Below the pieces are notes generated by a model. That model did no database searches. It worked only from the letters and a program-made list of their open reading frames with translations, and was not told the origin of the DNA. DNA of 64,000 nt from positions 62,001 to 126,000 of IMG/VR virus record IMGVR_UViG_3300009181_000033; one strand, given 5' to 3'. Made by a program: the position numbers and the translations under genes. Of the stretch, positions 887 through 56,668 are shown one piece after another; the first letter of the stretch is position 1; each line of letters opens with the position of its first letter.

Positions 887-1099
887 TCAACTACGAATTT
901 CTAGTTCAGCTTCGAGTTCGGTGATTTGCCTTTTTAATTCAGCAATTTGTAATCTAATCTGAGCGGTGGAAAGATTACTAAAATCTTTTGGTTTAGGTAA
1001 ACCAATCATTCTACTTTTTTCTTTCTTATCTTCGGTTAGTTGGGCTCGCTTAATTTCTTCTGTAATAATCTGCTTAAGTTGTGCTGCGGTGATTTTCAT
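887..1099 (-). CDS. putative virion protein with MKIT..QL..II.EE leader
   Basis: N-terminal motif shared with other ORFs; ATATTTA directly upstream. Confidence 0.65.
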   Translation of the reverse strand: MKITAAQLKQIITEEIKRAQLTEDKKEKSRMIGLPKPKDFSNLSTAQIRLQIAELKRQITELEAELEIRS

Positions 1100-1244
1100 G
1101 GTGATAAATATATCTCCTAATTAAAAATGTCAGTGAAGTTGAAAATATCATATACTGATGATTAGCAACGCGAGGTGTATCATAGGGATATTTATTTATT
1201 GTGAGTTAGAGAAAAGATACGGCCTTGTGCCGTATCATGAATCG

Positions 1245-1649
1245 TCATATTCTATCATGCTGAGTTTCAATGTATTTTTTCACACTTTCTTCGTTGGTTT
1301 CTCCAACAGATCCGTAGAAGGTTCCTCTACTCCACAAACCTGATCCCCAAAATTTTCTACCTTTTAGTTTTGGAAACTTAGTGAAGATATACACAGCTGA
1401 TATTGATTTCAACGTTTTTGCTATTTCTATCGGAGCTGTTTGATGATCCGCCTGAACAAAAATGTGAACATGATCTGGCATCACTTCAATGGTATGTAAT
1501 AGCCAACCATATTCTCCACAAGTTTCTGCAATGATATGTTTTGTCTCGACAGCAATATCATCTTTTAACACTGCATGTCGATATTTTGGGCACCAAACGA
1601 TGTGATAACCGAGTGAATGAACGCAATTATTTTCTGATATTTTTTGCAT
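1245..1649 (-). CDS. tnpA: IS200-type Y1 (HUH) transposase
   Basis: YHIVWCPKYR, DHVH (HUH), LWSRG, catalytic YIETQ; likely start MQKISENN. Confidence 0.95.
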   Translation of the reverse strand: MQKISENNCVHSLGYHIVWCPKYRHAVLKDDIAVETKHIIAETCGEYGWLLHTIEVMPDHVHIFVQADHQTAPIEIAKTLKSISAVYIFTKFPKLKGRKFWGSGLWSRGTFYGSVGETNEESVKKYIETQHDRI

Positions 1650-1668
1650 ATTGGTTATACTTATAAAC

Positions 1669-2832
1669 GTGAACAGGACGATCAAGGTAAAATTACAACT
1701 TTCTGATGCAGATGTTCTCTCGCTTAGAGAAACTCAGAAGATTGTTTCGTCCTGCTTCAACGATCACGTAGCTTGGTCATTTAAGAAGAAGTCTTGGTCG
1801 AAGTTAACTGCCCATAAAGATCTCTATTTCTCACAGAGAGAAAAATTCCCTCAACTTCCGTCTGCAATGTTGCAATCCACAAGAGATACAGCTCTTGAAT
1901 CTGTAAAAGCGTTAAAATTCAAGTTTCAGCCTAAGAAATCTGAAAACAGCGGGATTAGGTACGATAAGAGATTGTTCTCACTAAGAGGAGAACAACTTAC
2001 TTTGAGCTCTATAAACGGTAGAATTAAGACAATAGTTCAATTCCCTGAATGGTGTAAGGAAGTTGTAAAAAAGGGAAAGGTTCAAGGAATTCAACTTTGC
2101 TGGGACAAGAAAAAGAAACAGTTTAATGCGAGTATAGTCTTTAGCTTGTTCGATATTAAGCCTAAATCAGACGGAACAGTCATAGGCTTAGATAGAGGTT
2201 TGATCAACTTAGTGACGAGTTCAGAAGGTGAAATTTTTGGTGGGAAATCAGTCAGAAAGAATCAGAGGAAGTTCCTCTACTTGAGGAAGAAGTTGTCGAC
2301 AAAAGGTACTCATTCCGCTAAAAGGCTTCTTAGGAAGATTAGTGGAAAAGAGCAGCGGTTCAGTCGAGAAATTAATCACATCATTGCGAAAGAATTGTCT
2401 GAAAGAAGTGAAGTCAAAACGTATGTCATAGAGGATTTAAGCGGAATTAGAAACAAATCAAGAGGAAGAAAGATGAACAAGATTCTCTCCTCTTGGGCTT
2501 TTAAACAGTTTGAATCTTTCTTGACTTATAAGTGCACAGCAAAAGGAATATCTGTCGAAAAAGTTGATGCAAGATATACGTCACAAAGATGTTCTTGTTG
2601 CGGAACAATTAGAAAAGAAAATCGTTTGAGAGGAAGATACTCCTGTAATCGATGTAGTTTCACAAAACACGCAGACATTAATGCAGCAATTAATATCAGA
2701 GATCGTTGGATCTCTAAATCATCTCGCAGCTTGAACTGTGAGCAGGATGCAGTCAATCATCCACACGGAAACAGTGTTGTTCTTGACGTTGGATCAAGCG
2801 CTGAGTTCCAAGGTCACGGCCTCGTGCCGTGA
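1669..2832 (+). CDS. tnpB: RNA-guided endonuclease TnpB
   Basis: RuvC motifs GLDRG / IEDL / HADINAA, TSQRCSCCG zinc ribbon; GTG start at 1669 after ATACTTA. Confidence 0.95.
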   Translation: MNRTIKVKLQLSDADVLSLRETQKIVSSCFNDHVAWSFKKKSWSKLTAHKDLYFSQREKFPQLPSAMLQSTRDTALESVKALKFKFQPKKSENSGIRYDKRLFSLRGEQLTLSSINGRIKTIVQFPEWCKEVVKKGKVQGIQLCWDKKKKQFNASIVFSLFDIKPKSDGTVIGLDRGLINLVTSSEGEIFGGKSVRKNQRKFLYLRKKLSTKGTHSAKRLLRKISGKEQRFSREINHIIAKELSERSEVKTYVIEDLSGIRNKSRGRKMNKILSSWAFKQFESFLTYKCTAKGISVEKVDARYTSQRCSCCGTIRKENRLRGRYSCNRCSFTKHADINAAINIRDRWISKSSRSLNCEQDAVNHPHGNSVVLDVGSSAEFQGHGLVP

Positions 2833-2840
2833 CTATTTGA

Positions 2841-3109
2841 CCCTCCGCATTACATTTCGGGAAACTCCGTTCATCCGTTAATCCCTCGTGTTGGAAGAAG
2901 ATCTCTTCCGATTCCTTGAATAAGGAACGTAGATCCTCGTAGCCCAGCTCAATGGAATTGGTTCCACTTCCCCAAGGATCGGTGATTCCAATACTAAACC
3001 TCTTGTAGGTTGGATTCCAATGAATGCTTAGATGATTTCCTTCCATATCATGAAAACCAGCCGAGGTGTTCTTCTTCTTTTTTGCCGTGGTGTTCAACCC
3101 CTTCTTCAT
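2841..3109 (-). CDS. hypothetical protein whose stop was displaced by the IS insertion
   Basis: Promoter at 3110-3145; native end would be CNAEG-TAA at the empty site; now reads on into the IS to 2753. Confidence 0.6.
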
Positions 3110-3851: not shown

Positions 3852-4031
3852 TCACCTGATCACCTCGTAACAACTTCGAAACCCATTGAATTCCCAACGA
3901 ACAATCTCTCCGTTTCCCAAAAGAACCTCAACATTTCTCCAGGATACCTTGAGAATCAATCCAATCTCAGGTGTGTAACGGTGAACCACCAATTTTCCAG
4001 GTTGAATATCGTTAACACTTGAAGGAATCAC
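3852..4031 (-). CDS. MKPGD-family small protein (IQPGKLVV), not in the ORF track
   Basis: Manual translation, 59 aa, GTGA overlap with the upstream gene. Confidence 0.6.
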   Translation of the reverse strand: MIPSSVNDIQPGKLVVHRYTPEIGLILKVSWRNVEVLLGNGEIVRWEFNGFRSCYEVIR

Positions 4032-4345
4032 GGATCATCCTTTTCATCCTTACACATGTGATCCAAATAGAATGGAAGGGCACCTGGTGGCATGGGTTGA
4101 ACCTGAAACATTTGTTGGGAAATTTGAGTATAATTCCGTGTGATGGGCCTCACGATATTATCAAAGGGATTCTTAAAATTGCTCCATAACACCTTGGCAT
4201 TGTTTTCATCGATTTTTTCCACCACCGTTCCAAGTGAATGTGGGGCCAAATAAAACCGTACCATATCACCTGGTTTTGGTTCATTACAAAACTTGCCTTC
4301 GATGGTTACCAGGGTTCTAATATCCATGATTCTAATATCACTCAT
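4028..4345 (-). CDS. MKPGD-family protein with C-terminal extension
   Basis: PKPGDMVRF...LGTVV...VLWS. Confidence 0.7.
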   Translation of the reverse strand: MSDIRIMDIRTLVTIEGKFCNEPKPGDMVRFYLAPHSLGTVVEKIDENNAKVLWSNFKNPFDNIVRPITRNYTQISQQMFQVQPMPPGALPFYLDHMCKDEKDDP

Positions 4346-4599
4346 GATTCACCTTCCACCTGTTGAGGAATTGCCCGATTTAACCAACCAATAATACCCC
4401 TTGAGGTGATAACCCGGCAACCATTTCCACCTCGTTCAAAGGAATCCTCCAATACCATTGCGAGTTCTCCTGTTTCAAAGAATCCACTAAAACCATTGGG
4501 ATTTTCTTCGATCTTTCCCCACCTGGCACGGAGAACATTACCGAACATCTTATCAATCTCAGGAATTCCTCCTAAACGAACGAGTTCACCAGGTTTCAC
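4342..4599 (-). CDS. MKPGD-family small protein
   Basis: MKPGELVR...GIIGW. Confidence 0.75.
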   Translation of the reverse strand: MKPGELVRLGGIPEIDKMFGNVLRARWGKIEENPNGFSGFFETGELAMVLEDSFERGGNGCRVITSRGIIGWLNRAIPQQVEGES

Positions 4600-4640
4600 T
4601 TGAGCACCTCTATGCTAGAGTACCACACTGATCGGGTGTT

Positions 4641-4835
4641 TTACACGCACGAGATCATCTCAAGACTGACCGGTTGGAGGCTCAAGGTTCTCCCGTCTTG
4701 AAGCACGATCTTCCAAACATCCAGTGTTCCACGTTTCCCAGGGCTCAACACGATACCCAACATCCCGTTGTACTCTTTGGTCCAGGACTTGTCACCCGCC
4801 CTCACTTTCACTCGAACCAGATCACCAGGTTTCAT
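4641..4835 (-). CDS. MKPGD-family small protein, KOW-like
   Basis: MKPGDLVRV...GMLGIVL...LEMIS. Confidence 0.75.
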   Translation of the reverse strand: MKPGDLVRVKVRAGDKSWTKEYNGMLGIVLSPGKRGTLDVWKIVLQDGRTLSLQPVSLEMISCV

Positions 4836-5047
4836 ACGATCACCTCAGTTTTAAGGTGTGTTACCTGAGATGATTCGGATAAATCCGGCCATAAAATACG
4901 TACCCTATTTTTATCAAATATTTCTAGTACAATTCCAAGCCTCATGTGGCCATTGTAGAAGTTACCTACCATATCACCTGGTTGTGGATTGTGTACCGGG
5001 CCACCGGTGGGGGCAGAAAGTGAAAGTGTGTAGTGATTAGAGATCAC
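4832..5047 (-). CDS. MKPGD-family small protein
   Basis: PQPGDMV...LGIVL...ILWP. Confidence 0.65.
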   Translation of the reverse strand: MISNHYTLSLSAPTGGPVHNPQPGDMVGNFYNGHMRLGIVLEIFDKNRVRILWPDLSESSQVTHLKTEVIV

Positions 5048-5050
5048 AAT

Positions 5051-5269
5051 TCACTTTACCTCATCTGTGTAACCTGAGAAAATATTGATTACTCCACGAT
5101 CGGTAATCACATGGTAAAATACCCGAGGATTATCACCGCTTTCCACAGATTCCTCCAGAAAAATTCCGATGGTATCCGAAGAAAATCGAATCACAGGTTC
5201 CCCTGGTTTATAATCAAGAGGATATCCATGGGAATGTGCATAGATTCGAATCAAATCACCCGGTTTCAT
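5051..5269 (-). CDS. MKPGD-family small protein
   Basis: MKPGDLIR...GIFLE. Confidence 0.75.
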   Translation of the reverse strand: MKPGDLIRIYAHSHGYPLDYKPGEPVIRFSSDTIGIFLEESVESGDNPRVFYHVITDRGVINIFSGYTDEVK

Positions 5270-5433
5270 GTGGGAAACTCCGTTAGGTTGTGTTCCTGAT
5301 ATGCCAACTTCTGACCCGTGGATGGGTCAAGAACAACACAATAATCCTTTCCAAAAGTTTCAATGATAATCAATGGGGTTCGAGAATCAATGAGTCTGGA
5401 TCCCTTAAGAAAAACCATATCACCTGGTTTCAC
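5266..5433 (-). CDS. MKPGD-family small protein, not in the ORF track
   Basis: Manual translation (V/M)KPGDMVFL, 55 aa. Confidence 0.65.
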   Translation of the reverse strand: MKPGDMVFLKGSRLIDSRTPLIIIETFGKDYCVVLDPSTGQKLAYQEHNLTEFPT

Positions 5434-5606
5434 GAGATCACCTGGTAATAGTTAAGGAAGTATGCTTGTGCACCATGATTCACCTTGCCATTTGTGAATA
5501 AAACAACAAACCCGTATTCAGTTTCCTCAAGAATCACACCCATCTCCTCATCATGAAAAACCGAGGCATTTGTATAGATGGTATGAATCATATCACCGGT
5601 TTTCAT
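5430..5606 (-). CDS. MKPGD-family small protein, not in the ORF track
   Basis: MKTGDMI..., 58 aa, with its own GTGCAA promoter. Confidence 0.65.
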   Translation of the reverse strand: MKTGDMIHTIYTNASVFHDEEMGVILEETEYGFVVLFTNGKVNHGAQAYFLNYYQVIS

Positions 5607-5642
5607 GATTCACTCTACCATCCCTTTACGGAACTTTGCACC

Positions 5643-5837
5643 TCAAAGTGATTCTATTTCATCATAGAAAACTGGGAATATCTTTGCAGTTGCTGGATGA
5701 AGAACCTGAGATGGTTCGGATTGATCCACACCCATATCCTCCAGGAGTATGAAAAAATCATCTCGAATTTCACGAATCACCAAGGAACCATAGATATCGG
5801 AATCCACAGTCAATCGTACGAGATCACCACGAATCAT
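5643..5837 (-). CDS. MKPGD-family small protein
   Basis: MIRGDLVR. Confidence 0.7.
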   Translation of the reverse strand: MIRGDLVRLTVDSDIYGSLVIREIRDDFFILLEDMGVDQSEPSQVLHPATAKIFPVFYDEIESL

Positions 5838-6028
5838 ACAGGTTTAATCCTTTCCAGGCCAATTCTTTTCACACCGGTGCTGGTGATGATTTCACAGGTT
5901 GGAAATGATGGTGAATAATCTGGATGATTCCACAGAATTTGCTGAACATAAATTCCAAGATAAGGAATGGCATAAGTGTAGGAGTTAACCATCATTCCTT
6001 CAACTTTTACGAGATCACCGGGTTTCAT
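5834..6028 (-). CDS. MKPGD-family small protein
   Basis: MKPGDLVK. Confidence 0.75.
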   Translation of the reverse strand: MKPGDLVKVEGMMVNSYTYAIPYLGIYVQQILWNHPDYSPSFPTCEIITSTGVKRIGLERIKPV

Positions 6029-6248
6029 TGAGAATCTCCATATCCATTCTATAAACCCAACGTACTCCTCGAGGAAATAAAACCTTCAAAACATCCTGAC
6101 CCCATTGATTCTGATGTTCTTCAAGAAGGCAAACAATCTCATTTTTTTCCATGTGAATTTCCCAGGAATCACACTGATCATCAGTGTATACACGTACCAC
6201 ACCAACCTGAATTTTATTGCTGACACGAAGAAGATCACCAGGTTTCAT
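6015..6248 (-). CDS. MKPGD-family small protein
   Basis: MKPGDLLR...KVLFPRGVRW. Confidence 0.75.
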   Translation of the reverse strand: MKPGDLLRVSNKIQVGVVRVYTDDQCDSWEIHMEKNEIVCLLEEHQNQWGQDVLKVLFPRGVRWVYRMDMEILNETR

Positions 6249-6508
6249 ACCAATTCCAGATCACATCTTTTTATCCAACCACAACCACCTAATGTAGGTA
6301 AAACCTTTACCCAAAATGTTTGGATGTGTTTTCCATCACCAGGAATTTCCTTTTGTTCCAATACAATTCCAACATCAATGTAACTGAATTTTCCTACGTG
6401 GCACTTCCTATAGATCGATTCAAAACTCGGCGGATCATCCCACAGCACCTTAAATGGTTCCTCACCCTCCAATTCAGGAATGATTCGTACCATATCACCG
6501 GGTTTCAT
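6245..6508 (-). CDS. MKPGD-family small protein
   Basis: MKPGDMVR...GIVLE...WVKV...GW; promoter at 6509-6544. Confidence 0.75.
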   Translation of the reverse strand: MKPGDMVRIIPELEGEEPFKVLWDDPPSFESIYRKCHVGKFSYIDVGIVLEQKEIPGDGKHIQTFWVKVLPTLGGCGWIKRCDLELV

Positions 6509-6517
6509 GATTCCAAT

Positions 6518-6787
6518 CTACCACATCCATTCCACGGTTTGCACATCTTCTTCTCGAATCCAACCAATTCCGGTGGGACAAGAAATCTTCAACCACCTCT
6601 CGTAGATCTCATCATCTTCATCCACGTAAACATCACATTCCAATACCAATCCAACATCCAAGTAGTGAAAATGGGTTGCAGGTGGAATAAGAATTCCAGC
6701 CTTTGTGTACAACACCAAGGTGGCAACATCAGGAAAGTTTGGATCCAAACTTTCCGCACGAATTCGTACGAGATATCCAGGGATCAC
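6518..6787 (-). CDS. MKPGD-family small protein
   Basis: MIPGYLVR...CPTGIGW; close paralogue of 8294-8563. Confidence 0.75.
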   Translation of the reverse strand: MIPGYLVRIRAESLDPNFPDVATLVLYTKAGILIPPATHFHYLDVGLVLECDVYVDEDDEIYERWLKISCPTGIGWIREEDVQTVEWMW

Positions 6788-6999
6788 GAGATAACCTCGA
6801 GGATGGAATCTGTGAGTTCCGCAATTCTTCCTTTACCCATCCAATTAGGGAGAGTTTCGTTCATGAGAATCGTACACAGGTGAACCTGATCATATCCACC
6901 CGAATCACGGAAACAACCTTCCATCGGGCGAATGTGTAGGATGATTCCAATCATTTCCCTTCCTTGATCATGGGTTCGTACCAGATCACCAGGTTTCAC
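6784..6999 (-). CDS. MKPGD-family small protein
   Basis: MKPGDLVR...LEVIS. Confidence 0.75.
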   Translation of the reverse strand: MKPGDLVRTHDQGREMIGIILHIRPMEGCFRDSGGYDQVHLCTILMNETLPNWMGKGRIAELTDSILEVIS

Positions 7000-7232
7000 G
7001 TGAGAACCTCTATATCATCCTCAATCTCTTCATCCTTCAACCAGGTTCTTCCAACCATTCTAACAGGGGAGGTGAGAAAAACATGGATCTCGTTGTACTT
7101 GGATCCTGGCTTCTTTGGGATGAAATCAATCACCATTCCAAACCAATCACCATAAACGTTATCAAAAACTTGATGACGATGGTAAAAATCAGGCGGAACA
7201 GGTTTGTTTCTAACCATATCACCAGGTTTCAT
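6996..7232 (-). CDS. MKPGD-family small protein
   Basis: MKPGDMVR; promoter upstream. Confidence 0.75.
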   Translation of the reverse strand: MKPGDMVRNKPVPPDFYHRHQVFDNVYGDWFGMVIDFIPKKPGSKYNEIHVFLTSPVRMVGRTWLKDEEIEDDIEVLT

Positions 7233-7250
7233 GGTTCTACCTTACCACAC

Positions 7251-8251: not shown

Positions 8252-8293
8252 GGTTTTATCTTACCACACTCACGTGTGGGTTTGCACCGGGTT

Positions 8294-9558: not shown

Positions 9559-9562
9559 TTAT

Positions 9563-9910: not shown

Positions 9911-9935
9911 GTAACTGCGTCAACCAAAACATTAA

Positions 9936-10202: not shown

Positions 10203-10222
10203 AATTTCCTCCTACAGCTCTT

Positions 10223-15088: not shown

Positions 15089-15127
15089 AAATAACCAGTT
15101 GATCCATAATACTTAGTTAGTATTAAG

Positions 15128-16186
15128 ATGAATAATGAGCAATTATTAAGAGAAGTAATTAGATTATCGTTAGTTGAACAATCGTTTCAACAACCTCAAT
15201 CAAAGATGCGCAAAATTAAACTAACAGTGCCTCAAGAAAGTGGTCTAATAAAGACAATAGAACTTTCTGAGAGTTATATTGTCGGTGTTCTTGGTATACC
15301 AAGAAATCTTCTATTAGAAAGTGTTTACGATTCCAAACTAAATAAAGTCATATTGAAAGAACATCTTCTATTTGAAGGTTGGTGGAGTGAAGCAAAACAA
15401 CTTCTTGGAAAAGGTATTGATAAAATCAAAGAAACAAGCAATGACATTGTTGATGTCATTGAAAACTTTGGATCAAATGCTAAAGGTGTGGTTGCAGGTC
15501 TTTGGGCGGCAGCATCTGACAGTAACATTCTAGGAAAAGTAACAGGCGCTGCATCACAACTTGCAAGTAGAAGAGCAACTGACATTTTTGAGCCACTTAC
15601 CAAGATTACAAACTTATTAAAAAGTACAGAAATTGGCAAAAAAGCAGCTGGTGTATTTTCAAATATCATTGAAAAAATTAAAACTTTACTGAAGTCTTTC
15701 ACTTCGTTAGATGGATGGAAAGGAATGTTGTCTTCTGCTGCTGTTTATCTTGGCATAAAGTTTCTCAGATCTAAAATCGGAACTACAATTCAAGACATAG
15801 CAGATAAATGTAAATCAGGAGATTGGAAAAGCATTGCAAATGAAATTACAAAAGGTGTTTTTGCAAAAAGTTTAGATGCAATATCTGCTCCCGAAACTGA
15901 GCAAGAAAATGAAGAAAATGAAGAAGATGAAGAAGATGAAGAAACTTCATCCGAAGGTTCGTATATACGAATAGTCATCAACTTCATTAACAGCAAAGTT
16001 ATTAATGCGATTAAAAACTTTATTTTTGAAAAAATCAAATCAATCGCCGGCGATGCCATCGCAGCGCTCGCAGGCCCGGTAGCATGGATAAAAACCGCAG
16101 TAACAATATTCAAAACAACAGATTTCGTTGTTGAAACTTTAATGGACATAATTTCACGCGCAAAAGGTCCATTTAACAAATTGTAA
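15128..16186 (+). CDS. putative virion (internal) protein with LLREVIR..L.E leader and acidic tract
   Basis: AT-rich, opposite strand to its neighbours, ATACTTA upstream. Confidence 0.7.
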   Translation: MNNEQLLREVIRLSLVEQSFQQPQSKMRKIKLTVPQESGLIKTIELSESYIVGVLGIPRNLLLESVYDSKLNKVILKEHLLFEGWWSEAKQLLGKGIDKIKETSNDIVDVIENFGSNAKGVVAGLWAAASDSNILGKVTGAASQLASRRATDIFEPLTKITNLLKSTEIGKKAAGVFSNIIEKIKTLLKSFTSLDGWKGMLSSAAVYLGIKFLRSKIGTTIQDIADKCKSGDWKSIANEITKGVFAKSLDAISAPETEQENEENEEDEEDEETSSEGSYIRIVINFINSKVINAIKNFIFEKIKSIAGDAIAALAGPVAWIKTAVTIFKTTDFVVETLMDIISRAKGPFNKL

Positions 16187-17664: not shown

Positions 17665-18320
17665 TCAACCTGAGGAAAGGAAGTTTTGCATTTTCGGACT
17701 AGACTTCGCAAGAGTCGACCACACAACACGACCGATTCTCACCGGTCCCAATGCCAAAACTTCATTCTCGTCAGACTTACTCCTCAACGAGAGCAAATTA
17801 TAAAACCCATCAGGTCCACTCAAAAACGTTCCGCTGTTTTCGGCCACGTCTGCCGCCAAGATCACAATCATTCTCTTTCCAGGTGGCACAGAAGCTGTTG
17901 CAAATCGATACGCAATCGCCGGTTCATTCGTCCACGAATCAGCATTTTTTTGTGGGCTATATGTTCCACCCACAACCGCGTCACCTTCCAGCTCGTCAGC
18001 GAAGTCAGGAGATACTCCAAGTCCCCGGAGAAGCCCCACAGCCTCCTCCTTTGACAGTAACATTCCTCTATAAACTGTTTGAACAGCAGGCGGTTTCAAC
18101 ACGTCATCGTACGATCCATCCGCCAAACCAGCACGTAGCACGGCAACAGATTCAGGCGACATGTTGGTGCTCCACAAGATCTGCTTCGAAAGTTGTCGAA
18201 AAGTATCCTTTTCTATTTCGGTATCAGGTTCAGGCAAACGTTGAACTCTCGAATCACCAAAGGCATATGCACTATTTCTTCCCTAATGAGAGAACGAAGC
18301 TCAGATAAACGTATCTTCAT
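17665..18320 (-). CDS. putative ADP-ribosyltransferase-fold virion protein, frameshifted near 18275
   Basis: VYRG / SWT / ENEVL triad; leader MKIRLSELRSLIREE starts at 18320 in another frame. Confidence 0.55.
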
Positions 18321-18341
18321 GACGTTAAATATGGTCCCATC

Positions 18342-24720: not shown

Positions 24721-24912
24721 TCACATCATCATAGGATCAATGTCGCCCATTTTCTTGTGAGCAGCCTGAGCCTCAGCCGGCTCATACTCGTGATCATATC
24801 CACAGGTACCACACGCCTCATAATCTGCCGGCACGTCAGCAGGAACTGCACCCATCACACGACTCACTTCTTCTTTAATAATTCTTCTTAATTGTGAAAC
24901 TGTTAATCTCAT
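24721..24912 (-). CDS. small protein with MRLT.SQLRRIIKEE leader
   Basis: Leader motif; CGTCG..H.Y. Confidence 0.7.
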   Translation of the reverse strand: MRLTVSQLRRIIKEEVSRVMGAVPADVPADYEACGTCGYDHEYEPAEAQAAHKKMGDIDPMMM

Positions 24913-25074: not shown

Positions 25075-25446
25075 TTAGGCTGACAGCTCTCTTGAACTGA
25101 TCTCATCTGCCAAATTTCTTGAACTTGTTCCAATATAACCAAGAACCTCGCCCAAGGCTCGGGCCGCAGGATTCTTGCCCTCACCGGTCATCTTAAACCC
25201 AGCTGAATCAAGAATGTACCCATAGAGGCCTCGAAGATCCAACTTCCTCGAAAGAGCTCCAACAGCCTTCGGCGTCGACATCAGCTCCTTCGCTGCCTCA
25301 AGAACACCAGGCACATCATGCATCTTCCGTATCACAACAGCCCCTCCCACCGTATCCTCATGCTCACCACCAACATTCTTCATGTCCTCAGACAAACCAA
25401 TCTCTTCCCGAATAATCCGCCTGAGCTGCAACGTCGTCAACTTCAT
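25075..25446 (-). CDS. putative virion protein with MKLTTLQLRRIIREE leader
   Basis: Leader motif; ATAGTTA upstream. Confidence 0.7.
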   Translation of the reverse strand: MKLTTLQLRRIIREEIGLSEDMKNVGGEHEDTVGGAVVIRKMHDVPGVLEAAKELMSTPKAVGALSRKLDLRGLYGYILDSAGFKMTGEGKNPAARALGEVLGYIGTSSRNLADEISSRELSA

Positions 25447-25476
25447 GCCCATAACTATGGACCCCTCCCACAAAAC

Positions 25477-50133: not shown

Positions 50134-51372
50134 TTAGGAGATTGTGATTTCTAGTTCGAAGCCGAGGAATTCTATGAGTGATTTCCATCCTGAGTTGGCT
50201 GTTGATTGGAGGGTGGAGATTGCGTATTCGTAGAGGGAGTTGATTTTTTGGGTTGTTTTTTCCCAGAGGGATTGTGCCCAGGAGGAGATTTTTTCCCATG
50301 TGTTGGAGAGGGCTGATTTGGCTGAGTCTTTGGCGGCTTCGATGGAGTCGAAGAATCCTTCTTTGAGGAGTGATTGGTGTTGTGAGATTATTTCTCTGTT
50401 TTCTTTTTTGAGTTTTGAGGAGACGAGTGCTTTGAATTTTTCTGCTTCGTTGAGCATTGCGCCGATGACGTCGTTCATGGAGCGTTGTCCTTTGGTGGAT
50501 TTGCGTGATTTGAACTTGACTTGGATGGAGACGTCGGAGTATTTTTTGGCGAGTGCCGTTGTGATTCTTTTTAGTTCGAATGCTTTTTGGAGGGATGATT
50601 CTTGGTCTTTTGGGTTTGTGCCGGAGATGCCTTTTTTCTTTTTGTCTCCGTAGATTGTGGTGGCGCCTGCTGTGGTGAGGAGCCAGTCTGCATGTCCTTG
50701 TGATTCTTTGCCGAACTTCATGAGTCCGCTCATGGATTCGAAGACGAAGGCGTCTTTTAGTTCTGGGTTGGATTCTGGGTCGAGGATGCTGTCGAGTTCT
50801 GTTTGGATTTCTTCTTGGATTTTTTCTTGTTGGATGAGTTGTTTTTCTTCTTTGGTTTTCCCGCCGGCGGCGTAGCCTGAGCTCTTTCTGATTTCGGAGA
50901 CGTCCATTGAGTATTCGACTCCGCTGCGCATTTTCTTGATTTTTTCTAGGACTTCCCCTGCGTAGCCTGAGGCGTCGTAGCCTGCTATTTCGAGGGCGGC
51001 CATGTAGGTTGCCACGGCTTCTCCTCTCTCGCCCGACATGAATTGTCCTGATCCCATCTTGAGGGATATCTTTTGTCCCCCGATGATGAGGTCTGTCTTT
51101 GGTGTTGGGTTGGTTCCGCCGTTTTCCGACCAGAACTTGGAGACGGGTTGGGCGGCGGGCTTGTTGGCTTCGGGGTCTGGGATGGTGTAGCCGAGGTCCC
51201 CTTGGATTCCCTTTGCTATGGCTTTTGCGAGGGTGTTGAAGTGTTGTGGTTCTTCTCCTTTCGCTGCGTCTATGATGGCTGTTTCCAGTTGTGATGCGGC
51301 GCCTAGTTTGTCTTTGGCCAGGTTTTCTTTGAGGCAGAGCTTGACGTAATTTCTCAGGATGGTTTCGTTCAT
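50134..51372 (-). CDS. putative virion protein with possible PD-(D/E)xK-like domain
   Basis: Leader ILRNYVK..LKE; TPKTDL...ISLK; ATATTTA upstream. Confidence 0.65.
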   Translation of the reverse strand: MNETILRNYVKLCLKENLAKDKLGAASQLETAIIDAAKGEEPQHFNTLAKAIAKGIQGDLGYTIPDPEANKPAAQPVSKFWSENGGTNPTPKTDLIIGGQKISLKMGSGQFMSGERGEAVATYMAALEIAGYDASGYAGEVLEKIKKMRSGVEYSMDVSEIRKSSGYAAGGKTKEEKQLIQQEKIQEEIQTELDSILDPESNPELKDAFVFESMSGLMKFGKESQGHADWLLTTAGATTIYGDKKKKGISGTNPKDQESSLQKAFELKRITTALAKKYSDVSIQVKFKSRKSTKGQRSMNDVIGAMLNEAEKFKALVSSKLKKENREIISQHQSLLKEGFFDSIEAAKDSAKSALSNTWEKISSWAQSLWEKTTQKINSLYEYAISTLQSTANSGWKSLIEFLGFELEITIS

Positions 51373-51498
51373 GATGACATTAAATATGCCATCTTTTTTC
51401 TTTTATTCGCCCGGCCCGAAAAGATGCCATCTCGAACCTTTTCACCTGAAGTTGTTGGTTTAGCGCTGCGGCGGACTTCTTTTGCCTCCGATAATTCA

Positions 51499-51605
51499 AC
51501 ATTGAATTATATTTATACGTCGACGGAACTTTCGCGGAGTTCCGGAAAGGAAATTAGTACTATTATGCCTATAAAATTTAAGGGCGACATGACCAAGGTC
51601 GTCGC
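51499..51605 (+). repeat. 107-bp perfect inverted repeat, copy B (partner 22201-22307)
   Basis: Direct comparison. Confidence 0.92.
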
Positions 51606-54600
51606 TAAAAACAAGGGTGATATGACAAAGACAACCCTCCGTAAAAGGGTATCACAGATTTTAAGTGGAGGATCTTCGGGTTCTTCAACAAATGACATCT
51701 ACACCAAGATGCTCCTTCATTTTGACGATACCACAACATCTTCATCTTCAATATCTGCATATTATCCTTTTAGGTGCATCAAATCTTTTGATGGAACAAA
51801 GTTATATGTGGGAACCCACGGTCCGGACACGGGAAGTCAAGGAATTCACGTAATTGATGTCGCAACCAATACAAAAATAAAAACAATTTCTACAACTGGC
51901 AGTGTAATATCTCTTGTTACAAATTCAACGGGAACTAGAATTTATCGTACAAATTACGGTGTGAACAGTTCCTCGAATAGTGGTTCAACAGTTGAAGTAA
52001 TCGATACGTCAAATGATGCTGTCTTAAGTACAATTACTGTTGGATCATCAACAATGTACATTGCAATAACTCCTGATGATAAATTTCTATATGTCACAAG
52101 AGAGTACGGGGGTTTATATCGAATAGATACAGCCACGTTAACCCTAACTGATCTAGGAATTACAACAGCAAAATTTTCACCCATAATATCATCTGATGGA
52201 ACAAAGTTAATTGTAAATGATTCTACATCGGTTTATTGTTACTCAATAAATAAAACGACGGGTGGTTTGACTTTAGTGACCACATTGACAGGTTTTACTA
52301 ATCCTTTTACGTCGTGTTCAGATTCCACTAACGTATATGTTATGAATAAAACTACTTCTGGAACTGTGATACCAGTATCATGGTCAACCTTTACAAAGGG
52401 AACTGCAATAAGCGTGGGCCAGGAACCTTATGGCGGTAGCGTAAGTTCAGATGGAAAACTGTACGTTCCAAACGTTGCTGGCAATACGATTTCTGTCATT
52501 GACACTGCGACCTTGAAAGTTGTTGGTACGTTAACTGGATATACTTCGCCTCGTGATGCAATTGTTTTTGGTTCAAAGTTATTTGTTGCTAATTACACAG
52601 CGAGTGGTTCCATTTCCGTTATTGATCAAGCATCTTTCTCCGATGCAGCCCCGTCAGCAATAAAACAATTTAAGTTTGGCACCGTGACCACTTCCACCGC
52701 CCAGTCCAAGTTCGGTGGCAAGTCACTCGCCCTCGACGGCACCAACACCAACAAGCTCCAGTTTGCCAATCCAAAGACGAAGGCAATGGATTTCTCAAAT
52801 CAACCGTTCTGTGTTGAAGGTTGGTTCTACTTGAATTCACTAACAGGCAATTCATGGTTATTCGGATTTGCCAACAGTGATACAGGCGATTGGCAAGGTC
52901 TCCATGTCGAATTAGATCCCTCTAATCGATTTGCAGTTTACTTGACAACGAATGGTGCAACATGGGATTTGGGTCAACCAGGTATTTCAACAACGACAAC
53001 ACCTTCAATTAATTCTTGGTTTCACCTTGCCTTGACAAGGGAGACAGTCGGGGGCGATATAAAATTGTTCCATAACGGAACCCTGATCGGAACCAAGTCA
53101 ACAACTGCCACGCTTTACACTGGCGATTACATGCAAATTGGTAGAACCAATTATGTTAACGCCACTAGGGTTAATGGTTACGTCGATGATTTCCGTGTTG
53201 TTGTTGGTTCTTGTCCTTACTCTGCATCTGCCTTCGTTGTTCCCACGGCAGAGCTCACTGCAACCGCAGATACAAAGTTGCTCATCAAGGGATCAACCAC
53301 CATCAAGGATGAATCCTCGCTCAACCTCTACACGCAAGCACTTGGTTCTGCCGCATCCTCAACGGTTCAGTCCAAATTCGGTGGTTCTTCCATCAAGATT
53401 GCCTCTGCAACGGGTGATTACGTTAGGGTTTACAACAACACCCAACCCATCGACCTCCGCGACCGTGATTTTACTATCGAGGGTTGGTTCTATTTCAATC
53501 AAAAGAATGTTGGCTATCAACCTCTTTTGGGGATGTATACCGATGGTGACATGCAAGGATTTAACATGTGCCATGAGTCTGGTTCCGGACAAATAGTTTT
53601 TGCATATCTTGCAAATGGATCGTGGGGATCATTAAACTCTGGAGTGAATGCAGACACTGGTTCATGGCATCACATTGCTGTGACTAGATCTGGAACTTCC
53701 CTAAGATTCTTTTTTAACGGACAATTAAAGGCAACAAATACACTCGCTGCTGGTGCATCATTTGCAAGTAAAGACTATATTTTTGCGGGTTACTATCAAC
53801 ACCTGCCTGGCGGTGCAAAAACTTTCAACGGTTACATTGACGAAGTCCGCATATTGGTTGAAAAGTGTGCGTATGCTACCAACTTTACTCCTCAAACAAC
53901 ACAACATCAATTAGGTGCCAATATTGGTCTACCTAACACTGCTGCCCTCACGAATTCATTTACAAATACCACCTTGCCAGGTCTAAAGGTTTGGTACAAG
54001 GCAGACTCGATAACTGGATTGGCGGATGGTGCTTCCGTTACAAGTTGGGTTGACAGTTCAGGCAATGGAAAGAGTCTATCAGGCACAGGGGCAATCTATC
54101 AAGCAACGGGCATCAATGGTAGACCCATTGTTTACTTCAATGGTTCAGGTAATCTCACGGCAACCAATACAGGTCTCCCAACGGGTAATCCAGCAAGGAC
54201 AGTTTATACGGTTGGTTATAAGGGTGGAACTAACGCAAATCAAGAAATGTGGGGTTGGGGTGATAACTCAACCGGTCGCGTGGGTCTTTGGTGGGGCAAT
54301 AATGCTGTATGTTATGAATCCATGGGACCGACGACGGGATGGTATTCTACGGTTGTGGGGAACAAATTTATTTTAACTCATGCCCACGGCGCCGGAGAGA
54401 ACCTCACCCAAAATCCACTTTATGCAAACGGGGTTCCTACAACAATGTCAGCGACAGGAACGGCCAACATAGGCACTAGCACTATTGCTGTTGGTCACAT
54501 TCCAGGTTATACTGACGCCCTTTATTGGGTGGGTGGGTGTGCAGAAATATTGGTATTTGATAGAAAACATACTAATTCAGAGCGCCAGCAAGTTGAAGCA

Positions 54601-54633
54601 TATCTGGCAGAAAAGTATGGAATCTCCGTTTAG
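51565..54633 (+). CDS. large virion adhesin-like protein: YVTN beta-propeller, two LamG domains and a different C-terminal lectin module
   Basis: Paralogue of 19239-22241; C-terminal WYKADS...VTSWVDSSGNG...VEAYLAEKYG. Confidence 0.85.
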   Translation: MPIKFKGDMTKVVAKNKGDMTKTTLRKRVSQILSGGSSGSSTNDIYTKMLLHFDDTTTSSSSISAYYPFRCIKSFDGTKLYVGTHGPDTGSQGIHVIDVATNTKIKTISTTGSVISLVTNSTGTRIYRTNYGVNSSSNSGSTVEVIDTSNDAVLSTITVGSSTMYIAITPDDKFLYVTREYGGLYRIDTATLTLTDLGITTAKFSPIISSDGTKLIVNDSTSVYCYSINKTTGGLTLVTTLTGFTNPFTSCSDSTNVYVMNKTTSGTVIPVSWSTFTKGTAISVGQEPYGGSVSSDGKLYVPNVAGNTISVIDTATLKVVGTLTGYTSPRDAIVFGSKLFVANYTASGSISVIDQASFSDAAPSAIKQFKFGTVTTSTAQSKFGGKSLALDGTNTNKLQFANPKTKAMDFSNQPFCVEGWFYLNSLTGNSWLFGFANSDTGDWQGLHVELDPSNRFAVYLTTNGATWDLGQPGISTTTTPSINSWFHLALTRETVGGDIKLFHNGTLIGTKSTTATLYTGDYMQIGRTNYVNATRVNGYVDDFRVVVGSCPYSASAFVVPTAELTATADTKLLIKGSTTIKDESSLNLYTQALGSAASSTVQSKFGGSSIKIASATGDYVRVYNNTQPIDLRDRDFTIEGWFYFNQKNVGYQPLLGMYTDGDMQGFNMCHESGSGQIVFAYLANGSWGSLNSGVNADTGSWHHIAVTRSGTSLRFFFNGQLKATNTLAAGASFASKDYIFAGYYQHLPGGAKTFNGYIDEVRILVEKCAYATNFTPQTTQHQLGANIGLPNTAALTNSFTNTTLPGLKVWYKADSITGLADGASVTSWVDSSGNGKSLSGTGAIYQATGINGRPIVYFNGSGNLTATNTGLPTGNPARTVYTVGYKGGTNANQEMWGWGDNSTGRVGLWWGNNAVCYESMGPTTGWYSTVVGNKFILTHAHGAGENLTQNPLYANGVPTTMSATGTANIGTSTIAVGHIPGYTDALYWVGGCAEILVFDRKHTNSERQQVEAYLAEKYGISV

Positions 54634-54794: not shown

Positions 54795-54911
54795 ATTGCA
54801 TTGTTGAATTCGGCCACAACTTTTCTTTTTGTTCAAATTCAATATCGAATAATTTGAAATTGGTTGTTATTTATGTTTGTGGGCCTGGCGGTTCCATAGG
54901 AGGTTGAGACA

Positions 54912-55211
54912 ATGAAGGGAATTGTTGTTTTGCTCTGTGCGTTGGCTTTACTGGGTTGTGATGAAGACTGGGGGGTTGCTGGATCTGGTGGCGGGAGCGT
55001 TGACGCAGGAATCGATTCTGCCGGAAGTGGCGGGATGTCTTTGCCGCACAACTTGCCATGGGTCATATGTGGTGGCTACATTGAAAGGGAAGTCATTATA
55101 GAAGGTCAGGCGCATATCTTAGAGGAACCCGTTGATTGCAATGAACACATTGAGCCCGGCGATGACGTGATGGGAGGCTGGAGATCACCGTTCGAATCTG
55201 TGGTGAGGTGA
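54912..55211 (+). CDS. putative lipoprotein
   Basis: LLGC lipobox followed by GSGGGSVDAG. Confidence 0.65.
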   Translation: MKGIVVLLCALALLGCDEDWGVAGSGGGSVDAGIDSAGSGGMSLPHNLPWVICGGYIEREVIIEGQAHILEEPVDCNEHIEPGDDVMGGWRSPFESVVR

Positions 55212-55218
55212 CGCCAAC

Positions 55219-55629
55219 TTATTGTTCATTGACAATTTTGAAATGATAGTGCATTTCTCTCTTGATGCGAGGGACAGCTAGGAATCTCGGGATGATTTGC
55301 GGAAAATTGAAGATCTCAACCTCCACGCTGTGTGGGGAGAGTGAGAGTGTTCCTCGCACACCTTCTAGCAAGCCTCTGTCTATCCCAAAAGACATCTTTG
55401 AGCTATTCCTGTGCCAATGCATGCCATGTTTTTCAAGGCGTTTTGCAAGCGCCTCTGCTGCTGCAATTGCCTCGCTGTCACTTAAGGAGTGATCGTGGAC
55501 ATAGCGAATGTCAGGCTTGGGCTTAATTGTCGGAAGAGCATGTGGAGAGATGGCTGCAGTGGTCGGGGTTGGCGTGGGATGACATGCCGTGAGGAAGATA
55601 AAAATCGCAAGTATCGCGGCAGATCTCAT
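55219..55629 (-). CDS. PHA-granule-region family-like protein with lipoprotein signal
   Basis: LTAC lipobox; H.LS..EA...A..L...G..W...F...G.L....V.V. Confidence 0.6.
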   Translation of the reverse strand: MRSAAILAIFIFLTACHPTPTPTTAAISPHALPTIKPKPDIRYVHDHSLSDSEAIAAAEALAKRLEKHGMHWHRNSSKMSFGIDRGLLEGVRGTLSLSPHSVEVEIFNFPQIIPRFLAVPRIKREMHYHFKIVNEQ

Positions 55630-55973
55630 CTGTTGTAGTCGTCTTGTATCCTAACAATGTCGTCCTCACCAAAGTAAGTGCCTGTTTGGACTTCGATGAA
55701 GGTGAGAACGTCTGCCGGGTGATTGTTGGCAATCCTATGCTTGGCATTTGTGGGGATGTGAAAGTGCTGGTTGGGCCCGCAAGGATATTCCTGGTCTTCG
55801 AGTGTAATTGTGCCATAGCCTGAAAGAATGATCCAGTGCTCTGACCTCTTGGAGTGAGTCTGATAGGAGAGCCTCTGGCCCGGGTCGACAGTAATTAGCT
55901 TGGTGTGGTAGTTGTTTCCCTGCGAGAGGGTTTGGTAAGTCCCCCAAGGCCTTCTTGTTACTGTGCTGTTCAT
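55626..55973 (-). CDS. mannose-6-phosphate isomerase type II C-terminal cupin
   Basis: RPWG, PGQRLSYQ.H..RSEHW, IEVQTG.Y.GEDDIVR.QDDY.R. Confidence 0.92.
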   Translation of the reverse strand: MNSTVTRRPWGTYQTLSQGNNYHTKLITVDPGQRLSYQTHSKRSEHWIILSGYGTITLEDQEYPCGPNQHFHIPTNAKHRIANNHPADVLTFIEVQTGTYFGEDDIVRIQDDYNR

Positions 55974-56668
55974 GTTTCATAGTTCCTGTCGAAGAATTGT
56001 CTACCTGCTTTTCTAATGAGACCACGGAGGTACCTCTGTGAGAAGGTTTCGAGAGCACCGCCAGCACGTGAGAGTCTTGCTTGCAGGTCTTCGTGTTCTG
56101 TTTGCATTCCCGAGAGCATTCCTTTTTCCCAGCCTTCGGCTTCGTAGGCGTAGTTGAGGAAGTCTTCTTTTCGGAGTGAGCAGTCGTCTTGTGCCTCTGG
56201 AGTCTGAGGATCGTCTGCGTTGTCAAGTTTCTTCTTCCCTCGAGTGCCCTTTGAGGCCATGTTATGCCAGGCGCTTATAGCCATTGATGTCATGCTTTCT
56301 CTATCCGAGATGATGAGACCTGATGGTGACGTGGCGTATGCGCAACCGTAGACTATTTTTCCTGGACCTGCGGCCATGGCTATCTGATAGGCATCCCAAC
56401 AAGGATCGTTGGGTTTCGTGATGTTAACGTAACCAATGATGTGTGGTTCAATAAGACTTGATAATTCTTTGAGACCCAAGGTTTCTGCGTTCTCTTCGCT
56501 TGAGAAAGCATCAAGCAGAGAGTCTTCGAAGCCGGGAACGTCATAGATAACCGTGATGATAGCATGGCCGTTGTCGACAACAACGGCGCCGTATCCATCG
56601 ACTGAAGGAGTTCCGGCTTCTTTGAGGAGTCGTTTATAGATTCCCTCGAGGATAACATCGTTTTTCAT
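55970..56668 (-). CDS. putative virion protein with leader ending LLKE
   Basis: Start MKNDVILE after ATATTTA. Confidence 0.65.
   Translation of the reverse strand: MKNDVILEGIYKRLLKEAGTPSVDGYGAVVVDNGHAIITVIYDVPGFEDSLLDAFSSEENAETLGLKELSSLIEPHIIGYVNITKPNDPCWDAYQIAMAAGPGKIVYGCAYATSPSGLIISDRESMTSMAISAWHNMASKGTRGKKKLDNADDPQTPEAQDDCSLRKEDFLNYAYEAEGWEKGMLSGMQTEHEDLQARLSRAGGALETFSQRYLRGLIRKAGRQFFDRNYET

What the first reader, a model, noticed from the sequence alone, without database searches (positions are those of the whole stretch)
887..56668. Unrelated proteins share an N-terminal leader and an ATA(T/C)TTA motif: a likely capsid-loading signal
Seen: MKITAAQLKQIITEE (1099), EQLLREVIRLSLVE (15128), MKIRLSELRSLIREE (18320), MRLTVSQLRRIIKEE (24912), MKLTTLQLRRIIREE (25446), ILRNYVKLCLKE (51372) and YKRLLKE (56668) head otherwise unrelated cargo domains. 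Most lie shortly after ATATTTA or a variant of it. Established: T4 internal proteins use a short capsid-targeting sequence that is removed at Glu by the prohead protease. Inference: a portable packaging tag delivers varied effectors with the DNA.
Basis: partly seen in the sequence, partly recalled or inferred. Interest (0 to 1): 0.62.

Follow-up and report, generated by a model that had tools for sequence, protein, structure and literature searches.

The report
Shared leader tags on phage proteins
A 298-kb T4-like phage from fresh water puts one of two short N-terminal tags, each ending in the cutting motif of its head protease, on dozens of unrelated proteins, most likely to load them into the capsid as T4 does with its internal proteins; no experiment has yet shown this.

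Summary
Four window genes (starts 1099, 18320, 24912, 25446, all minus strand) begin with a conserved leader, M-K-(I/L)-T-x-x-Q-L-R-R-I-I-x-E-E. Two more (15128, 51372) carry a second leader class, M-N-E-x-L-L-R-x-Y-V-R-x-x-L-x-E. The seventh (56668) is only a resemblance.

The window lies in a complete 297,894-bp T4-like genome with a gp21-type (Peptidase_S77) prohead protease and a gp23 capsid protein. The class-1 leader occurs in at least 119 IMG/VR loci, with 10-27 copies per related 280-300 kb genome. It is fused to more than 120 unrelated cargo groups and is essentially absent from prokaryote genomes. Synonymous codons vary freely.

Both leaders end in (I/L)-x-E, the T4 gp21 cleavage motif. 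That motif is also conserved at the capsid-protein maturation site. Two conserved small genes next to the protease share the leader.

One cargo is an ADP-ribosyltransferase-fold domain, frame-broken here. Its intact homologues carry class 1, class 2 or no leader.

ATA(T/C)TTA is not part of the tag. It is an oriented promoter-like box, ATAnTTA, that also precedes sheath, fibre and scaffold-like genes, so it is probably the late promoter.

Best reading: a T4-CTS-like capsid-loading propeptide system on a much larger scale. Packaging and cleavage remain untested.

The parts
887..1099 (-). 70-aa gene with a class-1 leader (first 15 codons, 1055-1099) and a small coiled-coil-like cargo
   Evidence: Translation. 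External leader profile E 2.7e-5 at the first Met; E 2.2e-10 with profile A1, which includes this sequence.
1105..1111 (-). ATATTTA box, 5 nt before the ATG at 1099
18213..18320 (-). 35-aa ORF holding only a class-1 leader variant; out of frame with the body below
   Evidence: The same leader heads intact homologues P0029 and P0160.
18326..18332 (-). ATATTTA box, 5 nt before the ATG at 18320
17665..18282 (-). Open frame (stop to stop) of an ADP-ribosyltransferase-fold body. It overlaps the leader ORF over 18213-18282 in another frame, so this is a frame-broken leader-plus-enzyme gene. I left it broken.
   Evidence: The big search found 418 relatives. The R-G / S-W / E-x-E positions are invariant. 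The AF2 model has pLDDT 94.8. Fold hits are almost all ART-fold proteins. An independent sample has an identical contig over 18170-18471, and another strain lacks 17789-18614.
24721..24912 (-). 63-aa gene with a class-1 leader
   Evidence: Profile E 4e-10. No ATAnTTA box within 50 nt.
25075..25446 (-). 123-aa gene with a class-1 leader (true start is the ATG at 25446)
   Evidence: Profile E 1.3e-7.
25452..25458 (-). ATAGTTA variant of the box, 5 nt before the ATG at 25446
15128..16186 (+). 352-aa gene with a class-2 leader; cargo is rich in amphipathic helices
   Evidence: External class-2 profile E 0.09, fourth of 6,625 ORFs, at the N-terminus.
15109..15115 (+). ATACTTA box, 12 nt before the ATG at 15128
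50134..51372 (-). 412-aa gene with a class-2 leader. The cargo has an invariant T-P-K-T-D ... I-S-L-K motif, a weak lead to a PD-(D/E)XK nuclease.
   Evidence: Class-2 profile E 0.048. Close homologues keep the leader. Atlas lead. The AF2 model was too poor to use.
51381..51387 (-). ATATTTA box, 8 nt before the ATG at 51372
55970..56668 (-). 232-aa gene whose N-terminus only resembles class 2; the cargo has a lead to a GNAT acetyltransferase fold
   Evidence: No profile hit. Atlas result.
56675..56681 (-). ATATTTA box, 6 nt before the ATG at 56668

Best explanation
The two N-terminal leaders are most likely capsid-targeting propeptides of a T4-like jumbo phage. Each is a 14-22-residue amphipathic, charged helix that would dock the protein into the prohead core while the head assembles. 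The gp21-family protease would then cut after the conserved Glu of the (I/L)-x-E motif, at I-I-K-E and again at L-L-x-E in class 1, and at L-x-E in class 2. The cargo would stay inside the head and enter the host with the DNA.

Leader genes are probably switched on with the structural genes from an ATAnTTA box read by the phage's gp55-like late sigma factor. Where the box lies 5 nt before the ATG, the mRNA would be leaderless.

Shown here: the leaders, their modularity, the protease gene, the matching motif at the capsid-protein maturation site, the leader-like N-termini of head-module proteins, and the distribution of the box. Inferred: docking, cleavage, packaging, injection and late timing.
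For: 1. The genome is a complete T4-like phage with Peptidase_S77 (E 1e-25; phrog_207 E 2e-49) and Gp23.

2. T4 precedent: internal proteins share only a 10-19-residue CTS, which gp21 removes at L/I-x-E (PMC9026906; PMC3012670).

3. Eight of the nine strong class-1 hits start at the first Met of their ORF. Positions 16-22, which the search pattern did not constrain, are conserved as [KR]-A-[RK]-L-L-x-E.

4. Synonymous codons vary freely, so selection acts on the peptide.

5. The 166 leader proteins fall into 122 cargo clusters, 95 of them singletons.

6. The same ART-fold cargo occurs with a class-1 leader, a class-2 leader or no leader.

7. In the capsid protein, the T4 gp23 cleavage site aligns with a conserved V/L-L-[KR]-E in all five clade genomes.

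8. Two conserved small genes between the protease and the capsid gene carry leader-like N-termini. Profile-profile comparison gives probability 89.6% (E 1.9e-6) and 62% (E 7.5e-5), both in register.

9. All four related 278-293 kb genomes with leaders have S77, as do 2 of 5 fragments that are 16-29% complete.

10. In 596 Gb of prokaryote genomes the pattern occurs only 8 times. All are MAG contigs, and the two long ones (305 kb and 101 kb, the latter the same length as an IMG/VR contig) are probably mis-binned phage.

11. The ATAnTTA box precedes two tail sheath genes, a tail fibre gene, a head-decoration-like gene, an adaptor-like gene and a scaffold-like gene. A gp55-like late sigma factor is encoded.

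12. An ART enzyme behind a removable N-terminal propeptide parallels T4 Alt.
Against: - There are no virion proteomics, no cleavage data and no expression data. No RNA runs hold this DNA.
- The leader profile finds nothing in T4 itself, and I saw no resemblance to the T4 CTS beyond an M-K start and a hydrophobic-x-E end.
- The leader is far more conserved across genomes (capsid proteins 63-77% identical) than the mutation-tolerant T4 CTS would require. That could point to another, more exacting partner.
- Cargo is mostly small (median 105 aa with leader) and acidic (-0.08 net charge per residue), unlike the basic T4 internal proteins.
- Ten to 27 copies per genome, often in SD-driven tandem arrays without their own box in relatives, exceeds anything known for T4.
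- One ORF has an internal second copy.
- L/I-x-E is short and common, so its presence alone proves little.
Confidence: 0.55

Rival explanations
1. Core filler rather than effectors. The leaders do target proteins to the prohead core, but most of the small acidic cargos are scaffold-like or internal-peptide precursors. These would be chopped up and expelled, or kept as acidic peptides, like T4 gp67 and gp68. They would not be functional proteins delivered to the host.
For: Cargo is short, acidic and mostly orphan. The best non-array relatives of the leader are head-module core-type proteins. T4 gp67 and gp68 are small and are cut into fragments.
Against: Some cargos look like folded enzymes. 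One is an ART fold with an intact catalytic triad in its homologues. There are weaker leads to a GNAT fold and a nuclease. Extreme cargo diversity and strain-level presence/absence fit arms-race proteins better than structural filler.
Confidence: 0.2
2. The leader is a docking or oligomerisation helix for a partner unrelated to the capsid, for example a host or phage hub protein. It would be shared by a large family of host-takeover proteins, and its (I/L)-x-E ending would be incidental.
For: Invariance of about 10 leader residues across diverged genomes suggests a very specific partner. In the window the genes sit among small early-type genes. In relatives they form SD-driven tandem arrays without their own promoter box.
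Against: The leader is optional on the same enzyme domain and interchangeable with a different leader class. Head-morphogenesis genes next to the protease carry it. In this genome the leader genes use the box seen before structural genes, not the box of their early-type neighbours. Every genome at least 84% complete that I checked for the protease (five, all 278-298 kb T4-like) encodes S77, as do two of five 16-29%-complete fragments; the 484-kb LR756508.1 and phage immuto also hit the leader profile, and only immuto's annotated protease gene was seen.
Confidence: 0.15
3. Chance similarity, low-complexity sequence, or a nucleotide-level element (RNA structure or recombination site) rather than a peptide signal.
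For: The leaders are short and rich in K, R, E, I and L. The 56668 example has no statistical support.
Against: I estimate about 4e-4 chance matches of the 44-nt degenerate pattern in IMG/VR, yet at least 119 loci were found. All six Leu codons and four or more Arg codons are used at invariant residues. Hits sit at N-terminal Met positions.
Confidence: 0.02

Closest known systems
Capsid targeting sequence (CTS) of phage T4 internal proteins IPI, IPII, IPIII and the propeptide of Alt
   Same: A short N-terminal tag on otherwise unrelated proteins. The phage encodes a gp21-family prohead protease. The tag ends in hydrophobic-x-Glu, the gp21 motif. Cargo loci are polymorphic. One cargo is an ADP-ribosyltransferase-fold enzyme, like Alt (PMC9026906, PMC3012670).
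   Different: The leader profile finds nothing in the T4 genome. The tag is longer (14-22 aa), with a second cleavage-type motif. There are two interchangeable leader classes. Each genome has 10-27 or more tagged genes, not about four. Cargo is mostly acidic. Function is untested here.
Propeptide-processed internal head and ejection proteins of giant phages phiKZ, 201phi2-1 and SPN3US
   Same: A jumbo phage with many head-internal proteins, cut after Glu by a diverged gp21-like protease. Propeptides with redundant cleavage sites are proposed to direct incorporation (PMC9026906; PMC5694885 and PMC7411985, abstracts listed).
   Different: Those phages use S/A/G-x-E and have no single conserved leader sequence. 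Here a nearly invariant leader with I/L at P3 is shared, in a true T4-type (gp23 and gp21) lineage.
Cargo-loading peptides of encapsulins
   Same: Short terminal peptides that load diverse enzymes into an HK97-fold shell (PMC8346489, abstract listed).
   Different: To my knowledge encapsulin tags are usually C-terminal, are not cleaved, and serve a cellular compartment rather than a virion. There is no sequence relation.
T4 late promoter TATAAATA read by gp55
   Same: A single short AT-rich box, without a -35 element, lies upstream of structural genes in a phage that encodes a gp55-like sigma factor.
   Different: The consensus here is ATAnTTA, and TATAAATA occurs only 6 times. In about 29 cases the box lies 4-8 nt from the ATG (peak at 5), which would give leaderless mRNAs. 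No transcript ends are available.

Membership tests
T4-type capsid targeting sequence / prohead-protease propeptide | The phage encodes a gp21-family (Peptidase_S77) prohead protease | tested here: met
   PF03420 E 1e-25 and 6e-25; phrog_207 E 2e-49.
T4-type capsid targeting sequence / prohead-protease propeptide | A short tag at the extreme N-terminus | tested here: met
   Eight of nine strong hits start at the first Met of the ORF. The leader is 15-22 residues long. One internal extra copy exists.
T4-type capsid targeting sequence / prohead-protease propeptide | The tag ends in the protease motif L/I-x-E | tested here: met
   I-I-[KR]-E and L-L-x-E in class 1; L-x-E in class 2. The same motif is conserved at the site aligned with the T4 gp23 cleavage site.
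T4-type capsid targeting sequence / prohead-protease propeptide | The tag is shared by otherwise unrelated proteins (modular) | tested here: met
   122 cargo clusters among 166 proteins. One enzyme domain occurs with either leader or none.
T4-type capsid targeting sequence / prohead-protease propeptide | Sequence relationship to the T4 CTS | tested here: not met
   The leader profile finds no match in the whole T4 genome at E up to 0.1. This is therefore an analogue, not a sequence member.
T4-type capsid targeting sequence / prohead-protease propeptide | The tag is necessary and sufficient for incorporation into proheads, and is removed in the virion | not testable with these tools
   This needs virion mass spectrometry or a reporter fusion. 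The structure-based protease-substrate test gave no answer.
ADP-ribosyltransferase, R-S-E type (cargo of the gene at 17665-18320) | Catalytic Arg, Ser-x-Ser/Thr and Glu-x-Glu motifs in order | tested here: met
   R57-G58, S101-W102 and E157/E159 are invariant in 58 sequences.
ADP-ribosyltransferase, R-S-E type (cargo of the gene at 17665-18320) | ART fold | tested here: met
   The AF2 model has pLDDT 94.8. Foldseek top hits are dominated by ART-fold chains, best E 1.6e-3. In the VIA-align wide search, by my reading of the entry titles, about 46 of the top 50 entries are ART-fold, with Z 8.3-4.1. Single scores are middling; the consistency is what carries weight.
ADP-ribosyltransferase, R-S-E type (cargo of the gene at 17665-18320) | NAD-dependent transfer activity and an identified target | not testable with these tools
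   The copy in the window is also frame-broken.
T4-type late promoter | A gp55-like late sigma factor is encoded | tested here: met
   T4 gp55 matches genome 13434-13775 at E 7e-4; phrog_234 E 2e-6. Both are weak but concordant.
T4-type late promoter | The box lies upstream of structural genes, in sense orientation | tested here: met
   52 sense against 17 antisense occurrences. It precedes sheath (two genes), fibre, decoration-like, adaptor-like and scaffold-like genes.
T4-type late promoter | Consensus TATAAATA | tested here: not met
   Only 6 copies in 298 kb. The box here is ATAnTTA.
T4-type late promoter | Transcripts start just downstream, late in infection | not testable with these tools
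   No RNA run holds this DNA.

The most novel reading that the evidence does not exclude
A whole clade of uncultured 280-480 kb T4-like phages uses two interchangeable, nearly invariant address tags to load a large and fast-turning-over set of proteins into the capsid, tens per genome. These include ADP-ribosyltransferase-, acetyltransferase- and nuclease-like enzymes, and the phages inject them with the DNA. If so, the injected proteome of these phages can be read directly from sequence. Many of these genes would be transcribed as leaderless late mRNAs from an ATAnTTA box placed 5 nt before the ATG.
Probability: 0.3. Interest if true: 0.8.

Novelty: new variant of a known kind. Interest (0 to 1): 0.62.

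Why it matters
If the leaders are packaging tags, a 15-22-residue motif identifies, from sequence alone, the proteins that a widespread group of uncultured freshwater and marine jumbo phages carries in the capsid and delivers to the host. That would be a catalogue of candidate host-takeover and anti-defence proteins: more than 120 cargo groups in a capped sample.

It would also show that the T4 CTS principle, known from a handful of coliphage proteins, has been scaled up to dozens of genes per genome with a different and far more conserved tag. Such a tag would be a natural handle for loading foreign proteins into large capsids.

The promoter-like box gives a testable late-promoter consensus for this lineage.

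Tried and rejected
- **Protease-substrate complex.** Predicting the protease with the 63-aa leader protein P0003 gave no answer (score 0.01). This is not evidence either way.
- **Named phages.** tblastn of leader proteins against 50,697 named phage records found nothing useful. Only a profile search found a leader-like gene in Flavobacterium phage immuto and 12 in the 484-kb LR756508.1.
- **Word-based protein search with P0003.** Only 3 proteins, because a 15-residue match cannot reach significance in 5.8 billion sequences.
- **Family scans of cargos and head-module proteins.** Pfam and PHROGs gave essentially nothing.
- **T4 gp67 and gp68.** BLASTP of the two head-module proteins against them showed no similarity.
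- **P0005 structure.** The AF2 model had pLDDT 54.6, so no fold search was run. The nuclease idea remains a weak lead.
- **The 285-aa head-module protein upstream of the protease.** I thought it might carry a class-2-like N-terminus. The class-2 profile does not support this, so I dropped it.
- **Bacteroidota -7 promoter (TAnnTTTG).** By eye the register does not fit, and many genes have Shine-Dalgarno sites. Dropped.
- **RNA- or DNA-level element.** Rejected because synonymous codons vary freely.
- **Short-contig look-ups of leader-ART homologues.** These gave no genomic context.
- **Transcript evidence.** No RNA sequencing runs were found.
- **Typed peptides.** I rebuilt it from references.

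Full report
**What the window is.** The 64-kb window is positions 62,001-126,000 of a single 297,894-bp virus record with direct terminal repeats, rated complete. The genome encodes a gp21-family prohead protease (Peptidase_S77, E 1e-25; phrog_207, E 2e-49) and a Gp23-family major capsid protein. It is therefore a T4-like jumbo phage.

It has no near relative among 50,697 named phage records. By capsid protein, the nearest records are:
- a 484-kb uncultured phage (50% identity);
- Flavobacterium phage immuto (43%);
- Microcystis phage Mel-JY01;
- Rhodothermus phage RM378.

The DNA is held by freshwater metagenomes from several studies.

**Checking the peptide observation.** They fall into two classes.

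*Class 1* is M-K-(I/L)-T-x-x-Q-L-R-R-I-I-x-E-E, at window 1099, 18320, 24912 and 25446.
I estimate about 4e-4 chance matches.
- A profile built only from those foreign sequences, searched against all 6,625 ORFs of this genome, gives nine hits at E below 1e-4. Eight start at the first Met of their ORF. Three are window genes (24912, 25446, 1099). One is an internal second copy inside a 308-aa ORF.
- Positions 16-22, which the search pattern did not constrain, are also conserved ([KR]-A-[RK]-L-L-x-E).
- Invariant residues use all synonymous codons. Selection therefore acts on the peptide, not on an RNA or DNA element.

*Class 2* is M-N-E-x-L-L-R-x-Y-V-R-x-x-L-x-E, at window 15128 and 51372.
- It occurs in 10 further IMG/VR loci against about 0.1 expected by my estimate.
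- With an external profile the two window genes rank second-to-fourth of 6,625 ORFs, at their first Met, though only at E 0.05-0.09.

Window 56668 has no profile support.

**Modularity.** Removing the first 25 residues leaves 166 distinct leader proteins in 122 BLAST clusters, of which 95 are singletons. Median length is 105 aa, and the cargo is on average acidic.

The strongest single result concerns window 18320.
- There the leader stands alone in a 35-aa ORF. It overlaps, in another frame, a 205-codon open frame (17665-18282) over 18213-18282.
- The exhaustive protein search with that body found 418 relatives.
- Many intact 200-240-aa homologues begin with the same class-1 leader. Others begin with a class-2 leader. 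Others have no leader and start directly at the conserved domain.
- The two leaders are therefore optional, interchangeable add-ons. The window copy is a frame-broken leader-plus-domain gene.
- The break is not an assembly accident. A contig from an independent study is identical over 18170-18471, and a third sample carries a strain that lacks 17789-18614 altogether.

**What the cargos are.**
- *Body of the 18320 gene.* It has invariant Arg-Gly, Ser-Trp and Glu-x-Glu positions and folds with pLDDT 94.8. Its structural neighbours are almost exclusively ADP-ribosyltransferase-fold proteins. The Foldseek best hit has E 1.6e-3. In the wide VIA-align search, by my reading of the entry titles, about 46 of the top 50 entries are ART-fold, with Z 8.3 to 4.1. 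This parallels T4 Alt, a head-packaged ADP-ribosyltransferase that loses an N-terminal propeptide (PMC9026906).
- *Window 56668 cargo.* There is a lead to a GNAT acetyltransferase fold.
- *Window 51372 cargo.* There is a weak lead to a PD-(D/E)XK nuclease, but its model was too poor to test.
- *All other cargos.* No Pfam or PHROG family.

**Link to head assembly.**
- *Background.* In T4, internal proteins share only a 10-19-residue capsid targeting sequence. It docks them into the prohead core, and gp21 removes it at L/I-x-E (PMC9026906; PMC3012670).
- *Motif.* Both leader classes here end in (I/L)-x-E at residues 14-17, and class 1 has a second such site at residue 22.
- *Capsid site.* In an alignment with T4 gp23, the known T4 maturation site aligns with a conserved V/L-L-[KR]-E followed by S or A in this phage and in four relatives. 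The clade's protease therefore probably keeps the T4 specificity.
- *Relatives.* Those four relatives (278-293 kb; capsid proteins 63-77% identical) all encode S77. They carry 11-27 class-1 leaders each, mostly in tight tandem arrays. Smaller leader-bearing contigs are 16-29% complete fragments, and two of five include S77.
- *Head module.* In all five genomes, two small genes between the protease and the capsid gene have leader-like N-termini in register with the leader. Profile-profile comparison, with those proteins left out of the leader profile, gives probability 89.6% (E 1.9e-6) and 62% (E 7.5e-5).
- *Specificity to phage.* In 596 Gb of prokaryote genomes the leader pattern occurs only eight times. 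All are MAG contigs, and the two long ones (305 kb and 101 kb, the latter the same length as an IMG/VR contig) are probably mis-binned phage.

**The DNA motif.** ATATTTA is not over-represented genome-wide, but its placement is far from random.
- ATAnTTA occurs 52 times in sense and 17 times in antisense orientation within 50 nt upstream of my 396 gene calls.
- Spacing to the ATG is bimodal. One mode is a sharp peak at 5 nt (13 boxes, against 2 for the control word). The other is 14-38 nt, with a Shine-Dalgarno site in between.
- The box precedes two tail sheath genes, a 1,702-aa tail fibre gene, a head-decoration-like gene, an adaptor-like gene and the scaffold-like gene.
- It does not precede the neighbouring small early-type genes, which have a different upstream box.
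- The genome encodes a gp55-like late sigma factor. T4's own TATAAATA occurs only six times.

I therefore read ATAnTTA as the probable late promoter. This argues for co-expression with the structural genes. It is not part of a loading signal. The 5-nt spacing suggests leaderless mRNAs, but that is inference only, because no RNA data exist.

**Mechanism and confidence.** The best-supported account is a T4-CTS-like system. The leader docks the protein into the prohead core. The S77 protease cuts after the conserved Glu. The cargo stays in the head and enters the host with the DNA.

I give this 0.55, because docking, cleavage and packaging are all inferred. Several features differ from T4:
- there is no match to T4;
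- the leader is extremely conserved;
- the cargo is acidic;
- there are tens of copies per genome.

The main rivals are:
- the tagged proteins are core filler that is degraded rather than delivered (0.2);
- the leader docks to some other partner (0.15).

Chance and nucleotide-level explanations are excluded for class 1.

**Novelty.** I found no paper containing the leader sequence and no family model for it. The principle is known from T4, so this is a new variant of a known kind. It has a different tag, two interchangeable classes, and a much larger repertoire, in an uncultured lineage.

A cultured entry point exists. Flavobacterium phage immuto has an S77 protease and one leader-like 252-aa protein, immuto35A_190. 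I found no virion proteomics for it.

**Constraints observed.** Read laying was given 2,001 letters. The frame-broken ADP-ribosyltransferase-fold gene was read only by reference and left broken; natural intact homologues were used instead.

Noticed in passing
window about 4000-17000, minus strand: More than 20 small paralogous genes begin M-K-P-G-D-(L/M)-V. Each is preceded directly by a conserved G-G-T-A-N3-4-T-A-(G/A)-A-A-y-C box before the ATG. This upstream element differs from that of the leader genes and looks like a -10 box abutting the start codon.
   Followed up: partly
window 26512-29232 and 35554-35628, minus strand: A cluster of ten tRNA genes (Gly, Lys, Glu, Ser, Met x2, Arg, Tyr, Leu, Thr) plus a second tRNA-Lys.
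   Followed up: no
window 19239-22400 (-) and 51424-54633 (+): Two paralogous LamG/beta-propeller genes of about 1,050 aa lie in inverted orientation (160-nt arms, 92% complementary). They flank a 29-kb segment with higher G+C (0.47-0.54 against 0.42) that holds the tRNAs and many plus-strand genes. This may be an acquired or invertible segment.
   Followed up: partly
window 17789-18614: A strain in an independent freshwater sample lacks these 826 nt (11 other letters in their place). The deletion removes the leader ORF, most of the ART-fold body and the neighbouring 89-aa gene.
   Followed up: partly
window 58597-61269, plus strand: An 890-aa protein has a short weak match to the rifampin ADP-ribosyltransferase family (E 1e-6, residues 253-277) and to PHROG structural and tail-fibre families. 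It has no leader.
   Followed up: no
window 57801-58439, minus strand: A 212-aa gene has ATATTTA exactly 5 nt before its ATG. Its N-terminus is helical and ends in L-x-E-like motifs, but it matches neither leader profile.
   Followed up: no
genome 192339-193265, minus strand (outside the window; L142:340-1266): A 308-aa ORF carries two class-1 leader copies, one N-terminal and one internal near residue 80.
   Followed up: no
genome about 160920, minus strand (outside the window): A 28-codon open frame consists of a class-2 leader with no body. Identical 19-aa truncated class-2 ORFs occur on four IMG/VR contigs. These may be further broken leader genes.
   Followed up: no
L132 (IMG/VR contig, 270-aa ORF): A class-2 leader is fused to a cargo with a DnaQ-like exonuclease motif (F-D-T-E-T-T-G), recognised by eye.
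   Followed up: no
genome 248887-250338, minus strand (L138:13988-15439): An HNH-type homing endonuclease gene lies just downstream of the capsid gene, preceded by an ATAATTA box 7 nt before its ATG.
   Followed up: no
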